Positions 1,307-30,625 of a DNA stretch of 64,000 nt are shown piece after piece. The stretch is from Oculina patagonica. Lineage: Eukaryota. Every line of letters begins with the position of its first letter. Within the stretch, counting starts at the first letter, position 1. The translations under genes and the position numbers were made by a program. A model generated the notes under the pieces. It saw only the letters and a list, made by a program, of their open reading frames with translations, was not told the DNA's origin and did not search any database. The stretch is taken from the NCBI RefSeq assembly GCF_052425735.1, contig NC_135760.1:14012001-14076000 (forward strand), in the 5' to 3' direction.

Positions 1307-1547
1307 CCATCTAGCGTATTCCACCAGTTTGCATTACTGCAGGTTGAAGGCTGATTAGCATAAGCTGGTTCACTTGCTGGGCAGCATCTTCCATTCTCGA
1401 TACGTCCAACTCTTTCATCTCCCGGGGTTCGGTCACTTCTGTACAATCCCCTGAGGTACGTGTTACGTTTTGGGCACACAGACCATCCTGCCCTGTCCAG
1501 ACTTGTCACCCAATCAGCTTTGTCACACATACTTTTGTCACTAGGAG
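1307..1547 (-). CDS. Cys/Trp-rich module 3, first exon (partner exon expected left of the window)
   Basis: CDKADWVTSLDRAGWSVCPKRNTYLRGLYR...NANWWNTLDG, then donor GG|gtgagc. Confidence 0.8.
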
Positions 1548-28100: not shown

Positions 28101-30625
28101 ACTGGATTCTTCATCTTTATATAGTTCCTTGTCTTTACAGCAGCTCCACGATTTTTTCTCGGTCAAAGGCAGAACATGTTTATTTTTACCACAAGAGTAA
28201 CAAAAGCTTGTCCTGTTATTGAAACCTTGATCATCACAACATTCCAAAGCATCTTTGCTGTCCATCGCCAATGGGTAGAATGGTGTTAGAACATCATTAC
28301 AACAGATTCCGTGTGTTGATAAATAAGGTTCACTTCCACAACACTGCACTGTAGGATCGTCAGCATCCGTGTCTTGTCCAGGAAGGTCACGGACGTTTCC
28401 TAGAAGATATATCACACATTAACTTAGTAAATGGCCCAGCTCACCACGAGTCTCTAGTAGCTCAGTTGGTTAGAGCGCCCAACCGGTATCTGGGAGGCCA
28501 TGGCTTCGATTCCCGTCGGGGACTCGTTTTTTTTTTCTTTGTCCCACCCTCGTGTCGTGTTGAAAAATTCATCTCCATTACAAAAAATCGTCTTGGGGAA
28601 ATAAAATCAATCTGAGCTCAGAATGGTTGAAATTATTAGAGATGTTCTGACGAATAACCTTTGGTTATCTTCGAAAATCCTCCTCCTTCTTTTTTCAACA
28701 TTAAAATGAAATGTCGATCTCACTATTACACACACTCTTCAATTGTTTAACTGTTTATTCGTTCTCATTTGCCTGATAAATTTTTTTAAATGTAGAATGT
28801 TAGTTACAGTTACCTTGACAGCAAACCTGTCTGTCAGGAAAGAAAGCAGCATTTCTGCAACATCTGGCCTCCTTTGCACTTCTGCGCGTATTGTTGAAAC
28901 CGCTGACACTACCACCGCAGCAAAGAGATGTTTCTGTATTGTAGGGCTTCTCTCCAGCACAACATTTCCATGTTTCGTGTTTGGGACGAATATAAGATTC
29001 AGAACCACATCTATCGCATACTTTATAACGGACATCATAATGCTTATTTCCACACTTGCCAATCATATCTGTAAATTAGAAATTCCCAGAAGTCATTTAA
29101 AGGTCGATTTACACGGCACGATTTTGTAACATGTGACAAGCTTACGACAGCCTACGACAGTGGCAAGCAAGTTGTAAGTTTGATTGACAAGACACAATTC
29201 GTGTCGTAGGCTTGTCGTAAGCATGGTGCGACAAAATCGTACCGTGTAAATCAGCCTTAACACACCCACCGTATCAAAATCTCTAAAGTCTTGTTACTTT
29301 CCGAATATAATTAATTTACTCTGTGACTTAAGATATTTTCGTTATGATATTTTTTTGCTCTCATTTTGATGAAATGTGTAATCTTTTTGACAAAGATCAT
29401 TAGAAAGCTATCAACGACTCACCCTGACTTGGTAGAAATGTGTAACATTATTTATCGTGAGTCCAAAACGGTTTTCGTTAGTTTTTTACACCTACCTTTT
29501 TTGATCACCCATTTCCCAGAGTAGTCAAGAAAAGGTGTTTCAGTAAGCATTGGAGAGTGTTCGCCCATATGTCTCTTTCCACTTCTAAGTGACGCATAGT
29601 TTGATTTCTTGACCAATTTTACTTGGTGTTCAATTCTAACGGGCTGTCCTGATGGAGTACCATTCTTAAGGCCCATAGTTCCAGTTACAACAAACTTGTT
29701 TTCATCACATGAATGTTTGCTGTTCCACATCCAGTGGTTAAGATGTGGCAATCCCGGACAGGTTCCCAGTCCACAGCGCTTCCTTCCAGATTCACAACCC
29801 AACCACAAGCCGTCGCCATTGTCATTCAGCCTGTAAAACAGAGCAACTTCGTCTCCGTAGTGGATAGGGTCACTTGTTGTCAGCCTTCCCTTGCCATAGA
29901 TTTGAAACACTTTCTTGGCGTGGGTGTAAACATTTTCCGTTGTCTGACGCGTTGAGAAATTGCAGTCATTTTTGCTGCAAGCTAACCAAGATGTTGACGC
30001 ACTGGTTGCTTCGTTTACGGTAAAGAGAACAGCATCGCCACTGAAAATGTGATCTGGATCTTCTTCTTGTTCTTCGATAAAAGAGAAACAGAAGAACTTG
30101 TAAAAGCCTTTCTAGAACTACGAAACAACATTACATCTTAGTTATTTCTTTTAATGCGTTCCCATTTGTTTGTTTATTTTTCACCCTGTTTTGAAAACTA
30201 GTTAAACATGATTTCTTTAGGGAAAAAGCGCCCTGGGGACGAGGGAAGAATCTTTCTAAGAACTTCAGTAAAGTAAGTAAGTAAAAACTTTACTTCCGTG
30301 TCTATGTATTAAGCCCTTATGGGCTAATTGGGGACACCAATTAAAATACCTAAAAACTATTAATTCTTTAAAGAAACTCCAGTGAATAAGAATGCGTAAG
30401 CTAAACTAAGCTGACAAAAAAAAACAATTAGTGCATCCTGGTGAGCTGTCACAAAAACTTAAGAACATCATTTCGAAATAAGTAATACCGATGTGTAATG
30501 TTAAAATTAGGATCATACGTTTTGAGAGTTAACGTAAAACAACAAACCAAATTACCTGCATTCGTGTAACACAACAGCCCTATAAATAAAAGGAGTGTCA
30601 GACATCCAAGGGATGCCAAATTCAT
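1307..30625 (-). CDS. Giant secreted multidomain protein, 3'-incomplete: signal peptide, unknown domain, galaxin-like repeats, VWC, 6x pentraxin, >=3 biomphalysin-small-lobe-like modules
   Basis: Exons in transcript order, all GT-AG: 30556-30625, 29496-~30071, 28814-29068, 28067-28399, 26467-26673, 23014-23604, 22658-22868, 21685-22082, 20293-20503, 18512-18915, 17445-17652, 16459-16856, 15418-15625, 14005-14405, 13231-13438, 7498-7889, 6857-7097, 3856-4139, 2948-3185, 2057-2340, 1307-1547. Total 6359 nt and every junction phase is compatible. The last exon ends at a phase-2 donor, so the gene continues left of the window. Without transcript data, a split into two genes cannot be excluded. 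Confidence 0.8.
2057..3185 (-). CDS. Cys/Trp-rich module 2 (exons 2948-3185 and 2057-2340)
   Basis: Paralogous to module 1 with the same splice phases. Confidence 0.8.
2778..2928. mobile_element. Palindromic MITE
   Basis: GAGAGGTTAAGCATGACGTT ... AACGTCATGCTTAACCTCTC. Confidence 0.7.
3440..3740 (-). mobile_element. 5'-truncated R4/Dong-like non-LTR retrotransposon fragment (restriction-like endonuclease end)
   Basis: IDMAVPSDRN....EKLSKYKDLEIE..RMW...IPVIIGA...LGTAHILRRVL, directly abutting a (TAA)n tract. Confidence 0.7.
3741..3785. repeat. (TTA)n microsatellite
   Basis: Read directly from the sequence. Confidence 0.95.
3856..7097 (-). CDS. Cys/Trp-rich module 1, biomphalysin small-lobe-like (exons 6857-7097 and 3856-4139)
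   Basis: Three internal repeats of C..A.W..SLD..GW..C..G.YL.GL.R.....IE.G.CC. Confidence 0.8.
4962..5553. mobile_element. hAT-like MITE
   Basis: TIR TAGGCTTGTACCGAAAGTGCT with 8-bp TSD GAGGAGAA on both sides. Confidence 0.85.
6107..6810 (+). mobile_element. Penelope-like element remnant (GIY-YIG endonuclease)
   Basis: Broken frames encode VVYKFSCASCNACYINETSRHF..RVREHL...KHL...FEVLDSA...MYIKWKKPDLNQQ. Confidence 0.75.
7498..13438 (-). CDS. Pentraxin domain PTX-f (exons 13231-13438 and 7498-7889; its intron holds an LTR element)
   Basis: AFTVCLW, WHQICISWASSSG, LVLGQDQDSVGGGF. The phase-2 junction AG|G is intact. Confidence 0.85.
8411..8541 (-). repeat. 3' LTR of copy 1
   Basis: 131 bp, identical by eye to the other three LTRs. 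Confidence 0.95.
8656..12607 (-). pseudogene. gag-pol polyprotein interrupted by a +1 frameshift between RNase H and integrase
   Basis: ORFs 9956-12607 and 8656-10119 together match the 1316-aa ORF of copy 2. There is an extra base at ~10005 (GGACAATTATA vs GGACATTATA). Confidence 0.9.
12680..12810 (-). repeat. 5' LTR of copy 1
   Basis: 131 bp, followed on the minus strand by the PBS. Confidence 0.95.
13104..13165. repeat. Compound (CTT)n/(ATT)n microsatellite
   Basis: Read directly from the sequence. Confidence 0.9.
14005..15625 (-). CDS. Pentraxin domain PTX-e (exons 15418-15625 and 14005-14405)
   Basis: AFTVCLW, WHHICVTWENSSG, LVLGQDQDSVGGGF. Confidence 0.88.
16459..17652 (-). CDS. Pentraxin domain PTX-d (exons 17445-17652 and 16459-16856)
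   Basis: AFTVCLW, WHQICLSWERSSG, LVLGQRQHSVGGGY. Confidence 0.88.
17862..18115 (-). mobile_element. tRNA-derived SINE, degenerate (related fragment at ~20680-20915)
   Basis: On the minus strand a tRNA-like head is followed by the TCTTGGGCAAGACACTTTACTCT core. Confidence 0.6.
18512..20503 (-). CDS. Pentraxin domain PTX-c (exons 20293-20503 and 18512-18915)
   Basis: AFTVCLW, WHQICVSWESNSG, LVLGQDQDSVGGGF. Confidence 0.88.
19001..19165. mobile_element. Tc1/mariner (pogo-like) MITE
   Basis: TIR CAGTGGAACCCCGATATAACGAT with TA TSD. Confidence 0.85.
19264..19556. mobile_element. MITE with CATAG...CTATG ends (P-element-like)
   Basis: TIR CATAGTTAATAGAGG(G/A)AAATGGTTAGGAAGCC with 7-bp TSD CTTAGAA. 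Confidence 0.8.
19980..20255. mobile_element. CCAAT-rich MITE-like repeat
   Basis: Imperfect TIRs TTTTCACTTGAGTGTCG / CGACACTCAATTGAAAA and repeated GATTGG motifs. Confidence 0.65.
21685..22868 (-). CDS. Pentraxin domain PTX-b (exons 22658-22868 and 21685-22082)
   Basis: AFTVCLW, pentraxin signature WHHICVSWESSSG, LVLGQKQG. Confidence 0.88.
22101..22499. mobile_element. Non-autonomous DNA transposon, TTAA target
   Basis: TTAA|GATGGTTTCCACCGAACATTCGAGCAAT ... ATTGCTCGAACTTTCAGCGGAATCCATC|TTAA. Confidence 0.75.
23014..23604 (-). CDS. Exon 6: divergent single-exon pentraxin/LamG-like domain (PTX-a)
   Basis: TAVTISFWMKT...ALSYAT...LNDGNWHFLWIEWQS...LVLGQRQ...FVGEISHVNIWS. Confidence 0.8.
26467..26673 (-). 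CDS. Exon 5: von Willebrand factor type C domain
   Basis: C...PCRFCTC.....C....SC......C......ECCPVFQC shows the CxxCxC and CCPxxxC signatures. Phase 1-1 exon. Confidence 0.8.
26790..27273 (+). mobile_element. L2/CR1-like LINE 3' remnant
   Basis: Degenerate TR.S...EGGRTFAV...WNSLP coding, then AATAAA and a (TTAC)n tail. Confidence 0.65.
28067..29068 (-). CDS. Exons 3-4: galaxin-like di-cysteine repeats
   Basis: Repeated CC units (KCCAGEKPYNTETSLCCGG, RCCRNAAFFPDRQVCCQG, QCCGSEPYLSTHGICCND, SCCKDKELYKDEESSCC). Exons 28814-29068 and 28067-28399, both phase 1-1. Confidence 0.7.
28448..28575 (+). mobile_element. tRNA-derived SINE head
   Basis: A box TAGCTCAGTTGG and B-like CTTCGATTCCC, continuing into non-tRNA body with no proper cloverleaf. 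Confidence 0.65.
29102..29256. mobile_element. Harbinger-like MITE (partial second copy at ~34135-34245)
   Basis: TIR GGTCGATTTACACGGCACGATTTTG / CAAAATCGTACCGTGTAAATCAGCC. Confidence 0.7.
29496..30071 (-). CDS. Exon 2: ~190-aa Cys-containing domain with internal repeats, unassigned
   Basis: The frame is open upstream of the listed ORF (EQEEDPDHIFSGDAVLF...WLACSKNDC...VFQIYGKG...PIHYGDEVALF...WLGCESGRKRCGLGTCPG). Donor is G|gtaggt; acceptor position is approximate. Confidence 0.7.
30556..30625 (-). CDS. Exon 1 of giant gene: signal peptide
   Basis: MNLASLGCLTLLLFIGLLCYTNA has a hydrophobic core and T-N-A cleavage-like end, followed by a phase-1 donor G|gtaatt. Confidence 0.7.

What the first reader, a model, noticed from the sequence alone, without database searches (positions are those of the whole stretch)
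1307..30625. Giant secreted mosaic protein joining skeletal-matrix-like and immune-lectin-like modules
Seen: 21 GT-AG exons join in frame into >2100 aa. Order is signal peptide, unknown domain, galaxin-like CC repeats, VWC, six pentraxins, then at least three Cys/Trp modules. Established: galaxin is a coral skeletal organic matrix protein and pentraxins are Ca2+-dependent pattern-recognition lectins. Inference: this is an extracellular multivalent scaffold linking matrix or biomineral binding with microbe or symbiont recognition. I do not recognise this architecture from any named protein.
Basis: partly seen in the sequence, partly recalled or inferred. Interest (0 to 1): 0.85.

Follow-up and report, generated by a model that had tools for sequence, protein, structure and literature searches.

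The report
Giant coral multi-lectin membrane protein gene
The exon chain is real, but it is only the first half of a roughly 4,100-residue stony-coral protein that strings many sugar- and matrix-binding modules in front of a conserved, hydrophobic C-terminal region; it belongs to an 11-gene coral family that databases list only as "uncharacterized".

Summary

The gene does not stop at the window edge. Eleven more exons follow, giving 32 coding exons, 4,128 aa and 44.7 kb.

Domain order: signal peptide, beta-trefoil (the "unknown domain"), galaxin repeats, probable VWC, one divergent and five canonical pentraxins, four dermatopontin-like domains (the "Cys/Trp modules"), C-type lectin, a 1,076-aa Laminin_G_3 exon, a Cys-free stretch with conserved hydrophobic segments, a 50-residue Gly/Ala-rich hydrophobic segment, and a Cys/His tail.

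The genome is Oculina patagonica. A tandem copy keeps every compared exon, every splice site and the open frame (dN/dS 0.26). Eleven N-terminal exons pair one-to-one with eleven large C-terminal exons genome-wide. Other corals keep the same core around a different middle cassette. Database models of paralogues join the parts.

Four RNA-like runs did not cover the three tested exons (Gal2, VWC, P1), so transcription and junctions remain unproven.

Most likely this is a membrane-tethered multi-lectin recognition or adhesion protein, not a free matrix scaffold. A membrane-inserting effector is a weaker alternative. It is a new variant of known mosaic lectin proteins.

The parts
30556..30625 (-). 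Exon 1: start codon and signal peptide (MNLASLGCLTLLLFIGLLCYTNA), donor phase 1
   Evidence: The exon is kept at 95.7% in the tandem copy with AG/GT intact. An assembly gap (30693-30853) lies just upstream.
29496..30071 (-). Exon 2: 192-aa N-terminal domain, predicted beta-trefoil (MIR / RyR-NTD / IP3R-like)
   Evidence: No Pfam or NCBIfam hit. The AF2 model has pLDDT 61 and pTM 0.66. Foldseek against PDB and AFDB returns beta-trefoils at probability 1.0 and TM 0.5-0.6. There are 11 copies in the genome.
28814..29068 (-). Exon 3: galaxin-type di-Cys repeats, part 1
   Evidence: Pfam PF24748, 34.4 bits against a cut-off of 28. Splice sites.
28067..28399 (-). Exon 4: galaxin-type di-Cys repeats, part 2 (nine CC pairs across exons 3 and 4)
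   Evidence: Pfam PF24748, 32.9 bits. CC count.
26467..26673 (-). Exon 5: probable VWC (chordin-like Cys-rich) domain, 11 Cys
   Evidence: Pfam PF00093 at 24.8 bits, below the 27.6 cut-off. The exon is conserved at 56-57% in other corals at the same position.
23014..23604 (-). Exon 6: P1, a divergent single-exon pentraxin/LamG-like domain
   Evidence: Pfam Pentaxin 39.3 bits and Laminin_G_3 31.9 bits. It is 27-31% identical to P2-P6 and lacks the signature Cys.
22658..22868 (-). Exon 7: pentraxin 2, first half
   Evidence: Pfam Pentaxin 32.4 bits.
21685..22082 (-). Exon 8: pentraxin 2, second half (HICVSWES; loop GQKQGSVGGGF)
   Evidence: Pfam Pentaxin 87.5 bits.
20293..20503 (-). Exon 9: pentraxin 3, first half
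   Evidence: homologous to exon 7.
18512..18915 (-). Exon 10: pentraxin 3, second half (loop GQDQDSVGGGF)
17445..17652 (-). Exon 11: pentraxin 4, first half
16459..16856 (-). Exon 12: pentraxin 4, second half (loop GQRQHSVGGGY)
15418..15625 (-). Exon 13: pentraxin 5, first half
14005..14405 (-). Exon 14: pentraxin 5, second half. The donor at 14005 (GTGGGT) was chosen for phase; 14026 is an alternative.
   Evidence: The same length and GT are kept in the tandem copy.
13231..13438 (-). Exon 15: pentraxin 6, first half
   Evidence: It matches RefSeq model LOC144647504 (P0074) at 98.6%.
8411..12811 (-). Young Ty3/Gypsy LTR retrotransposon inside intron 15. It is not part of the coding sequence and is absent from the tandem copy's intron.
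   Evidence: RT, RNase H and integrase Pfam hits. The two 132-bp LTRs are 100% identical, and the element is 99.4% identical to the copy at 36758-41162. Intron length is 5,341 bp here against 957 bp in the copy.
7498..7889 (-). Exon 16: pentraxin 6, second half (loop GQDQDSVGGGF)
   Evidence: Pfam Pentaxin 86.6 bits. It is 100% identical to P0074. The whole domain hits neuronal pentraxin-1 at 1.3e-34 and CRP at 5e-25 in PDB.
6857..7097 (-). Exon 17 (A1): first third of dermatopontin-like domain 1
   Evidence: 100% identical to P0074. Fold evidence.
3856..4139 (-). Exon 18 (B1): second and third repeats of dermatopontin-like domain 1
   Evidence: Atlas features score 0.96 to clusters carrying PF14704. 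The AF2 model of A1+B1 has pLDDT 81.5, and its top seven Foldseek hits are dermatopontin-family proteins.
2948..3185 (-). Exon 19 (A2): dermatopontin-like domain 2, first third
2057..2340 (-). Exon 20 (B2): dermatopontin-like domain 2, remainder
1307..1547 (-). Exon 21 (A3): dermatopontin-like domain 3, first third. Its phase-2 donor at 1307 leads out of the window to exon B3.
   Evidence: The next exons are in L001.

Best explanation
The finding is the 5' half of one very large protein-coding gene of the stony coral Oculina patagonica. The gene lies on the minus strand at C3:13,997,946-14,042,625 and has 32 coding exons, 4,128 aa and 44.7 kb.

Shown:
- The protein starts with a signal peptide.
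- It then carries a beta-trefoil domain, galaxin-type di-Cys repeats, a probable VWC, one divergent and five neuronal-pentraxin-like domains, and four dermatopontin-like domains, each encoded by an A+B exon pair.
- These are followed by an EPN-type C-type lectin domain and a 1,076-aa single exon containing a Laminin_G_3 domain.
- The end consists of a Cys-free 360-aa stretch with conserved Gly-zipper hydrophobic segments, a ~50-residue Gly/Ala-rich hydrophobic segment followed by Arg-rich sequence, and a conserved CX6C...CX2C-HH tail.
- It is one of 11 paralogues that share the N-terminal core (trefoil-galaxin-VWC-P1) and the C-terminal core (CTLD-LamG3-hydrophobic end).
- The paralogues differ in a middle cassette built of phase-1/phase-1 exon units. 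The cassette holds 2-9 pentraxins and, in one paralogue, Pfam F5/8 type C (PF00754). In this tandem pair only, it holds four dermatopontin-like domains. Another coral has a MATH-like domain at that place.

Inferred mechanism: the long ectodomain is a multivalent array of glycan- and matrix-binding modules displayed at the cell surface. It is held there by the C-terminal hydrophobic segment, with the Cys/His tail inside the cell. The array serves recognition or adhesion (microbes, symbionts, matrix). The exchangeable middle cassette would set what each paralogue binds. No ligand, location or expression was shown.
For: Gene structure:
- The chain is in frame and GT-AG throughout.
- The RefSeq model LOC144647504 reproduces the junctions P6a-P6b-A1-B1-A2-B2 at 100% identity. 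In the tandem copy it reproduces A-B-...-CTLD-mini exon-big exon.
- RefSeq paralogue models join pentraxins-CTLD-big exon-C-terminus. A 4,218-aa GenBank model joins N-terminal domain-galaxin-VWC-P1-pentraxins-CTLD-big exon-C-terminus.

Selection:
- The tandem copy keeps 30 of 30 compared exons at identical length, every AG/GT, and has no stop in 4,051 codons.
- dN/dS is 0.26 overall and 0.11-0.48 in every block. Introns are only 89% identical and carry many indels.

Linkage of the two ends:
- There are exactly 11 N-terminal exons and 11 big exons in the genome. They pair 1:1 on the same strand, 21-60 kb apart.
- Two other coral taxa keep the order Nterm-Gal-Gal-VWC-P1-[variable]-CTLD-big exon.

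Domains: Pfam; pentraxin against PDB; dermatopontin fold; beta-trefoil.

Membrane end: hydropathy and conservation of the hydrophobic segments and the Cys/His tail in nine family members.
Against: - There is no transcript evidence. In four RNA-like public runs the contigs covered only intronic repeats. The Gal2, VWC and P1 exons had zero depth. RNA-like runs hold only 7-16% of the words of the P6b-A1 stretch.
- RefSeq cuts this locus and some paralogues into several models. One of them is a chimera across the two tandem copies.
- The topology is inferred from hydropathy and flanking charges alone.
- The C-terminal region gives weak hits to bacterial pore-forming effectors, which would fit a released effector rather than an anchor.
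- No binding specificity was tested. Two of the five canonical pentraxins have a changed Ca-loop, and the CTLD has WID instead of WND (sequence).
Confidence: 0.55

Rival explanations
1. Lectin-guided membrane-inserting effector. The protein is secreted. The lectin-like array docks it on a target cell (microbe, prey or competitor). The conserved C-terminal segment with its Gly-zipper hydrophobic stretches then inserts into the target membrane, as colicin- or VasX-type pore formers do.
For: - Atlas feature search of the C-terminal 510 residues returns many clusters of T6SS effectors (VasX_N, BTH_I2691 family) at 0.90-0.92, and also T3SS translocator and RTX clusters.
- NCBIfam BTH_I2691_fam aligns to the hydrophobic part, at E 0.0027.
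- Invariant Gly, Asp and Trp residues lie inside the hydrophobic segments, which is more than a plain anchor needs.
- One dermatopontin-family member, Millepora cytotoxin-1, is among the fold matches.
Against: - The HMM score is 16 bits against a cut-off of 150, and may reflect Gly/Ala-rich composition.
- The same family found nothing in a search of the whole genome.
- The PDB profile search found nothing.
- There is no fold model.
- A 50-residue hydrophobic stretch followed by Arg-rich sequence, in a protein with a signal peptide, would normally stop transfer in the producing cell's own ER membrane.
Confidence: 0.18
2. Two neighbouring genes rather than one. The first is a secreted ~2,500-aa mosaic ending after the C-type lectin exon. 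The second is a ~1,550-aa LamG3/hydrophobic-end protein that starts at an internal Met of the big exon.
For: - RefSeq annotates one paralogue exactly this way (LOC144642212, 821 aa, plus LOC144642213, 1,541 aa, which starts at MTSQQL inside the big exon).
- If the CTLD donor is not used, a stop follows after 7 codons.
- No RNA evidence bridges the parts.
Against: - Four other RefSeq models and three GenBank models join CTLD to the big exon.
- The 62 residues upstream of that Met are conserved in paralogues, and in a coral only 42% identical in this exon, with matches starting at residue 1 of the exon.
- The second gene would have no signal peptide.
- The donor, the two mini exons and the acceptor are kept in the tandem copy.
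- The N-terminal and big exons pair 11:11 across the genome.
Confidence: 0.15
3. One reading: a freely secreted extracellular scaffold that ties skeletal organic matrix (galaxin part) to microbe recognition (pentraxin part).
For: - The protein has a signal peptide, galaxin-type repeats and pentraxins.
- Pentraxins and galaxin-like proteins occur in coral skeletal proteomes (PMC7853314).
- Dermatopontin is cited as a mollusc shell matrix protein (references in PMC6637933).
Against: - It carries a conserved hydrophobic C-terminal region.
- The galaxin part is 196 of 4,128 residues.
- No proteomic or expression link to the skeleton was found.
Confidence: 0.08
4. A silent or decaying gene copy that is no longer used.
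For: - The tested exons have no depth in four RNA-like runs.
- A young retrotransposon sits in intron 15 in the sense orientation.
- RefSeq did not produce a clean model here.
Against: - The frame is open for 4,128 codons and all 62 splice dinucleotides are intact.
- dN/dS is 0.26 against the tandem copy at dS 0.086.
Confidence: 0.04

Closest known systems
Uncharacterized O. patagonica paralogues. RefSeq: LOC144643431 (XP_078358811.1, 3,347 aa), LOC144638230, LOC144643433, LOC144642185. GenBank: ACROYT_G005997 (4,218 aa).
   Same: They share the C-terminal core (CTLD, 1,076-aa LamG3 exon, hydrophobic end, Cys/His tail) at 66-78% identity in the big exon. ACROYT_G005997 also shares the N-terminal core (trefoil, galaxin, VWC, P1) at 72-81%.
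   Different: None has dermatopontin-like domains. They carry 2-9 pentraxins, and one also carries Pfam F5/8 type C (PF00754), in the middle cassette. None is characterised, and most models are cut at the N-terminus.
RefSeq LOC144647504 (2,431 aa), the database's own model over part of this locus
   Same: It is 100% identical to window exons P6b, A1, B1 and A2. It shows the pentraxin -> dermatopontin-like -> CTLD -> big exon order.
   Different: It starts at pentraxin 6. It jumps from exon B2 of this gene to the tandem copy 58 kb away, which makes it a chimera, and it ends early in the C-terminal region.
Neuronal pentraxins, CRP and SAP (pentraxin family, PF00354)
   Same: Domains P2-P6 match at E 1e-34 (NPTX1) to 2e-20 (SAP). 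They share the CxSW core, the SYA..QANE strand and, in P3, P5 and P6, the GQ[DE]QDS.GG.F calcium loop.
   Different: The domains here are tandem repeats inside one chain rather than subunits of a ring. P2 and P4 have changed loop residues, and P1 is only pentraxin/LamG-like.
Dermatopontin family (PF14704): vertebrate DPT, Biomphalaria shell dermatopontin, Limulus 18K-LAF, Millepora cytotoxin-1
   Same: The predicted fold of an A+B unit matches them over its whole length (probability 1.0, TM 0.53-0.62). All share three repeats and many disulfides. Feature search points to the same family.
   Different: The Pfam DERM model does not hit, even on a five-unit array, and identity is 13-15%. Here there are 14 Cys per unit, two exons per unit, four units in tandem inside a giant protein, and at least 70 such units genome-wide.
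Galaxin (coral skeletal organic matrix protein; PF24748)
   Same: Di-Cys repeat motif, with nine CC pairs and Pfam scores above the cut-off.
   Different: Galaxin is a small protein made almost only of such repeats. Here they are 5% of the chain, and no link to the skeleton was tested.
Polydom/SVEP1 and cnidarian CnPolydom (mosaic proteins with a pentraxin domain)
   Same: Large extracellular mosaics that include pentraxin, discussed as coral recognition and adhesion molecules (PMC12960093).
   Different: No CCP/sushi, EGF, VWA or HYR domains were found here. This protein has multiple pentraxins and a different C-terminal core.

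Membership tests
Pentraxin (PF00354) | Match to the family HMM above the gathering score | tested here: met
   P1 scores 39.3 bits, P2a 32.4, P2b 87.5 and P6b 86.6, against a cut-off of 25. The whole P6 domain hits NPTX1 at 1.3e-34 in PDB.
Pentraxin (PF00354) | Pentraxin signature HxCx[ST]Wx[ST] and the acidic calcium loop | tested here: inconclusive
   The strict pattern is found only in P2. P3-P6 keep [HQ]-I-C-x-[ST]-W, and P1 lacks the Cys. The loop is GQDQDSVGGGF in P3, P5 and P6 but changed in P2 and P4.
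Pentraxin (PF00354) | Ring-shaped oligomer and Ca2+-dependent ligand binding | not testable with these tools
   This needs protein biochemistry.
Galaxin-like repeats (PF24748) | HMM above the gathering score, with repeated di-Cys motif | tested here: met
   34.4 and 32.9 bits against a cut-off of 28; nine CC pairs in 196 aa.
Galaxin (skeletal matrix protein proper) | Presence in the skeletal organic matrix | not testable with these tools
   No O. patagonica skeletal proteome was available.
VWC (PF00093) | HMM above the gathering score | tested here: inconclusive
   24.8 bits against a cut-off of 27.6, with full-length alignment 1-57/57. The exon is conserved in other corals.
Dermatopontin (PF14704) | Match to the family HMM | tested here: not met
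   No hit at E <= 10 on one unit or on a five-unit array, nor on single exons.
Dermatopontin (PF14704) | Three-repeat disulfide-rich all-beta fold of about 150-180 residues | tested here: met
   The AF2 model has pLDDT 81.5 and pTM 0.82. The top seven AFDB Swiss-Prot matches are all family members, full length, at probability 1.0. No solved structure is available for comparison.
C-type lectin (PF00059) | HMM above the gathering score; EPN/QPD and WND calcium-sugar motifs | tested here: met
   67.1 bits against a cut-off of 22.6. The sequence shows GEPNQ, but WID in place of WND, so sugar binding is plausible and not assured.
Beta-trefoil, MIR-type | Three-fold trefoil fold; Pfam MIR match | tested here: inconclusive
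   The fold matches RyR-NTD, IP3R, POMT2 and SDF2 at probability 1.0 and TM 0.5-0.6, but the model pLDDT is only 61 and there is no Pfam hit.
VasX / BTH_I2691 pore-forming T6SS effectors (NF041559, PF20249) | Match to the family HMM above the cut-off | tested here: not met
   16.3 bits against a cut-off of 150, over the hydrophobic part only. No match in the whole genome. Atlas feature scores of 0.90-0.92 are a lead only.
Polydom/SVEP1-like | CCP, EGF, VWA and HYR domains around a pentraxin | tested here: not met
   None of these families appeared in the Pfam scans of the exons or of the paralogue models.

The most novel reading that the evidence does not exclude
Stony corals have a private family of ~4,000-residue proteins. 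In these, a swappable cassette of lectin-like modules (pentraxin, dermatopontin-like, discoidin, MATH-like) aims a conserved C-terminal membrane-inserting, pore-former-like domain. This would be an animal counterpart of modular bacterial toxins, used for immunity, competition or symbiont control.
Probability: 0.15. Interest if true: 0.85.

Novelty: new variant of a known kind. Interest (0 to 1): 0.5.

Why it matters
Corals depend on telling friend from foe at their surfaces, yet few of their recognition molecules are known.

This locus shows a coral-restricted 11-gene family of giant proteins. The family has a fixed N-terminal and C-terminal core and a middle section that has been rebuilt by shuffling phase-compatible exons. 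This tandem pair alone inserted four dermatopontin-like domains.

That makes the family a ready-made case for studying how binding repertoires diversify. It also offers a candidate for cell-surface recognition or adhesion in Oculina patagonica, a species used to study bleaching and Vibrio infection.

The ~1,600-residue C-terminal core has no known family and ends in an unusual conserved hydrophobic region. Its fold and membrane behaviour are directly testable.

The finding also flags annotation errors at the locus: split, truncated and chimeric database models.

Tried and rejected
- RNA support. Read laying on 22900-28500 with four RNA-like runs showed contigs only on intronic repeats. There was no depth on the Gal2, VWC or P1 exons and no splice joints. 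A second run search on 6857-7889 found only 7-16% word shares in RNA-like runs.
- Searching 1.8 billion representatives with the N-terminal domain gave only exon-sized ORFs from unannotated coral assemblies and no full-length proteins.
- A homologue search with the VWC exon found no candidates.
- The look-up of encoding contigs on the RefSeq model returned no record, because the window's own genome is withheld.
- Pfam and NCBIfam gave nothing for the N-terminal domain, the A/B units, the big exon beyond LamG3, or the C-terminal region.
- The PDB profile search with the C-terminal alignment gave only noise.
- A search of the window's own genome with NF041559 gave nothing.
- An Atlas search of big-exon residues 215-1031 gave no usable hit.
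- The PDB Foldseek search for the dermatopontin-like model gave only weak three-fold beta modules such as the PCSK9 C-terminal domain.
- An alignment that included A-only exons misplaced them onto repeat 3 of the B exons. This shows the repeats are related to each other, but that alignment was not used for folding.
- The earlier idea that the modules are 'biomphalysin small-lobe-like' was not tested directly. That lobe is described as a three-faced beta-prism with six disulfides (PMC12186885), which resembles these units in general form. The best fold matches here are dermatopontins.
- Literature searches found no paper describing this family or architecture.

Full report
**Observation**

The window is eukaryotic DNA (about 39% G+C, with introns and retroelements). 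It lies at C3:14,012,001-14,076,000 of a 529-Mb assembly.

I listed every stop-free stretch of the minus strand and every plausible acceptor and donor with its phase. One consistent chain of 21 exons emerged between 30625 and 1307. Every boundary is AG...GT, all phases match, and there is no stop in 2,119 codons.

**The gene is twice as long as reported**

The last in-window exon ends with a phase-2 donor, so the gene must continue. A search of the window's own genome with exon B1 found further copies just left of the window. I fetched the flanks as L001 and L002 and continued the chain. It adds:
- B3, A4 and B4;
- a 30-nt mini exon;
- a C-type lectin exon (Pfam Lectin_C, 67 bits);
- a 44-nt mini exon;
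- a 3,228-nt single exon with a Laminin_G_3 domain;
- four C-terminal exons.

The final model has 32 coding exons, 4,128 aa and 44,680 bp from ATG to stop.

**Whose genome it is**

A RefSeq protein named for Oculina patagonica (LOC144647504) sits on a contig of 29,980,128 bp. That is the length of the window's contig. The protein is 100% identical to window exons P6b, A1, B1 and A2. A second contig length (46,518,285 bp) also agrees. The genome is therefore O. patagonica.

**Is it one gene?**

Direct RNA evidence failed. In four RNA-like runs the contigs lay only on intronic repeats and the three exons tested had zero depth. RNA-like runs hold only 7-16% of the words of the P6b-A1 stretch. The case for one gene therefore rests on four indirect lines.

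1. Database models.
- LOC144647504 reproduces my junctions from pentraxin 6 to B2. It then jumps 58 kb into the tandem copy, where it joins A/B units -> mini exon -> CTLD -> mini exon -> big exon. It is a chimera, but it supports the splice pattern.
- RefSeq models of paralogues on chromosome 2 join pentraxins-CTLD-big exon-C-terminus.
- One GenBank model of 4,218 aa joins everything from the N-terminal domain to the tail.

2. A tandem copy 59 kb downstream.
- It keeps 30 of 30 compared exons at identical length, with every AG and GT, and has no stop in 4,051 codons.
- It is 95.4% identical in protein.
- dN/dS is 0.26 overall and 0.11-0.48 for each of seven blocks at dS 0.086.
- Introns are 89% identical and differ widely in length.

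3. Pairing of the two ends. The genome has exactly 11 copies of the N-terminal exon and 11 of the big exon. They pair one-to-one, on the same strand, with the N-terminal exon upstream and 21-60 kb between them.

4. Other corals. Contigs from two other coral taxa (N-terminal domain 72% and 48% identical) keep the order Nterm-Gal1-Gal2-VWC-P1-[variable]-CTLD-big exon. The big-exon match starts at the exon's first residue.

Against one gene, RefSeq splits one paralogue into an 821-aa and a 1,541-aa model. The second starts at an internal Met of the big exon. I rate 'two genes' at about 0.15.

**What the parts are**

- *Pentraxins.* P2-P6 are 56-68% identical to each other. The P6 domain (P2-P6 are close copies of one another) is closest to neuronal pentraxin-1 (E 1.3e-34) and also hits CRP and SAP. 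P3, P5 and P6 keep the GQDQDSVGGGF loop, which aligns with the GQEQDS.GG.F loop of CRP and NPTX1. P2 and P4 do not. P1 is a divergent pentraxin/LamG-like domain.
- *The 'unknown' N-terminal domain.* It has no Pfam or NCBIfam hit. An AF2 model is moderately confident (pLDDT 61, pTM 0.66). It matches beta-trefoils of the MIR / ryanodine-receptor N-terminal type at probability 1.0. Distant homologues show the threefold internal repeat.
- *The 'Cys/Trp modules'.* These are two-exon units of about 175 aa with 14 Cys and three internal repeats. A model of A1+B1 (pLDDT 81.5, pTM 0.82) matches, over its whole length, mouse, cow, pig and human dermatopontin, Biomphalaria shell dermatopontin, the Limulus haemagglutinin/aggregation factor and Millepora cytotoxin-1. 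These are the top seven hits, all at probability 1.0. The Atlas feature search agrees. The Pfam DERM model does not hit, so I call them dermatopontin-like, not members. More than 70 such units are scattered through the genome.
- *C-type lectin.* It has an EPN motif, but WID instead of WND (sequence).

**The C-terminal core**

Beyond the LamG3 domain, the big exon has no recognisable family. The next 360 residues have no Cys and contain conserved Gly-zipper hydrophobic segments with invariant Asp and Trp.

Then comes a ~50-residue Gly/Ala-rich hydrophobic stretch (KD 2.5) followed by RGRVRADEERRQQ. After that is a conserved CX6C...CX2C-P-T-x-K-H-H tail.

With an N-terminal signal peptide, the simplest reading is a stop-transfer anchor with a cytoplasmic tail that may bind metal.

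A second reading comes from weak similarity to VasX/BTH_I2691-type pore-forming T6SS effectors. The Atlas scores are 0.90-0.92. NCBIfam gives 16 bits against a cut-off of 150. Nothing appeared in a whole-genome search with that family or in PDB.

**How it most likely works**

Shown: the protein is a signal-peptide-led chain of modules. Their families bind glycans, matrix or cell surfaces: beta-trefoil, pentraxin, dermatopontin-like, CTLD and LamG.

Inferred: the array is displayed on the cell surface by the C-terminal hydrophobic segment and acts in multivalent recognition or adhesion.

The family logic supports this. The ends are conserved, and the middle is a cassette of phase-1/phase-1 exon units that differs between paralogues and species:
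- 2-9 pentraxins;
- Pfam F5/8 type C (PF00754) in LOC144642185;
- four dermatopontin-like domains in this tandem pair only;
- a MATH-like domain in another coral.

The dermatopontin block is the least constrained (dN/dS 0.48).

**Comparison and novelty**

No paper in the library describes this architecture. The nearest named mosaics, polydom/SVEP1 and CnPolydom, share only the pentraxin.

The architecture exists in databases only as uncharacterized or hypothetical O. patagonica models. Several of those are truncated, split or chimeric.

I class the finding as a new variant of a known kind (mosaic multi-lectin surface proteins) with an unassigned C-terminal core.

Noticed in passing
window 8411-12811 (minus), compared with 36758-41162: A 4.4-kb Ty3/Gypsy element sits in intron 15 in the same orientation as the gene. 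Its two 132-bp LTRs are 100% identical. It is 99.4% identical to a second copy in the window, and it is absent from the tandem copy's intron. Its RT motif reads VLLDNIL, so the YxDD position is LLDN.
   Followed up: partly
C3:13,939,000-13,978,756 (window -33244 to about -73340; L008-L012): This is a complete tandem duplicate of the whole 32-exon gene, 95.4% identical in protein. Some introns (Nterm-Gal2, P6b-B1) are 97.5-98.6% identical while most others are 81-94% (one 69%), which suggests patches of gene conversion.
   Followed up: partly
RefSeq LOC144647504 (P0074) over window 13439-2055 and the tandem copy: The database model is a chimera. It runs from pentraxin 6 to exon B2 of this gene, then continues with the A2-equivalent exon of the tandem copy 58 kb away. 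It also ends early, through an alternative splice inside the C-terminal exon.
   Followed up: yes
window 30693-30853: A 161-N assembly gap lies 68 bp upstream of the start codon, so the promoter and 5' UTR cannot be assessed. An in-frame ATG at 30667 would add 14 residues before the signal peptide.
   Followed up: no
genome-wide, e.g. C1:26.2-26.4 Mb, C4:29.4 Mb, C10:11.7 Mb, C12:9.98-10.0 Mb, C13:1.1-1.25 Mb: More than 70 dermatopontin-like B exons occur in clusters. Wherever I looked, an A exon lay 0.3-2.7 kb upstream. This is a large, unannotated domain expansion in this coral.
   Followed up: partly
L004:14765-15400 (also L005 and L006): In another coral the place of the pentraxin and dermatopontin cassette is taken by a 211-aa exon with a weak MATH_2 hit. 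This shows that the middle of the gene is exchangeable between lineages.
   Followed up: no
L002:6705-7517 (model residues about 4020-4112): The tail after the hydrophobic segment has four Cys and two His (CX6C ... CX2CPTxKHH). These are conserved in all nine family members aligned, and the motif looks like a small metal-binding site.
   Followed up: no
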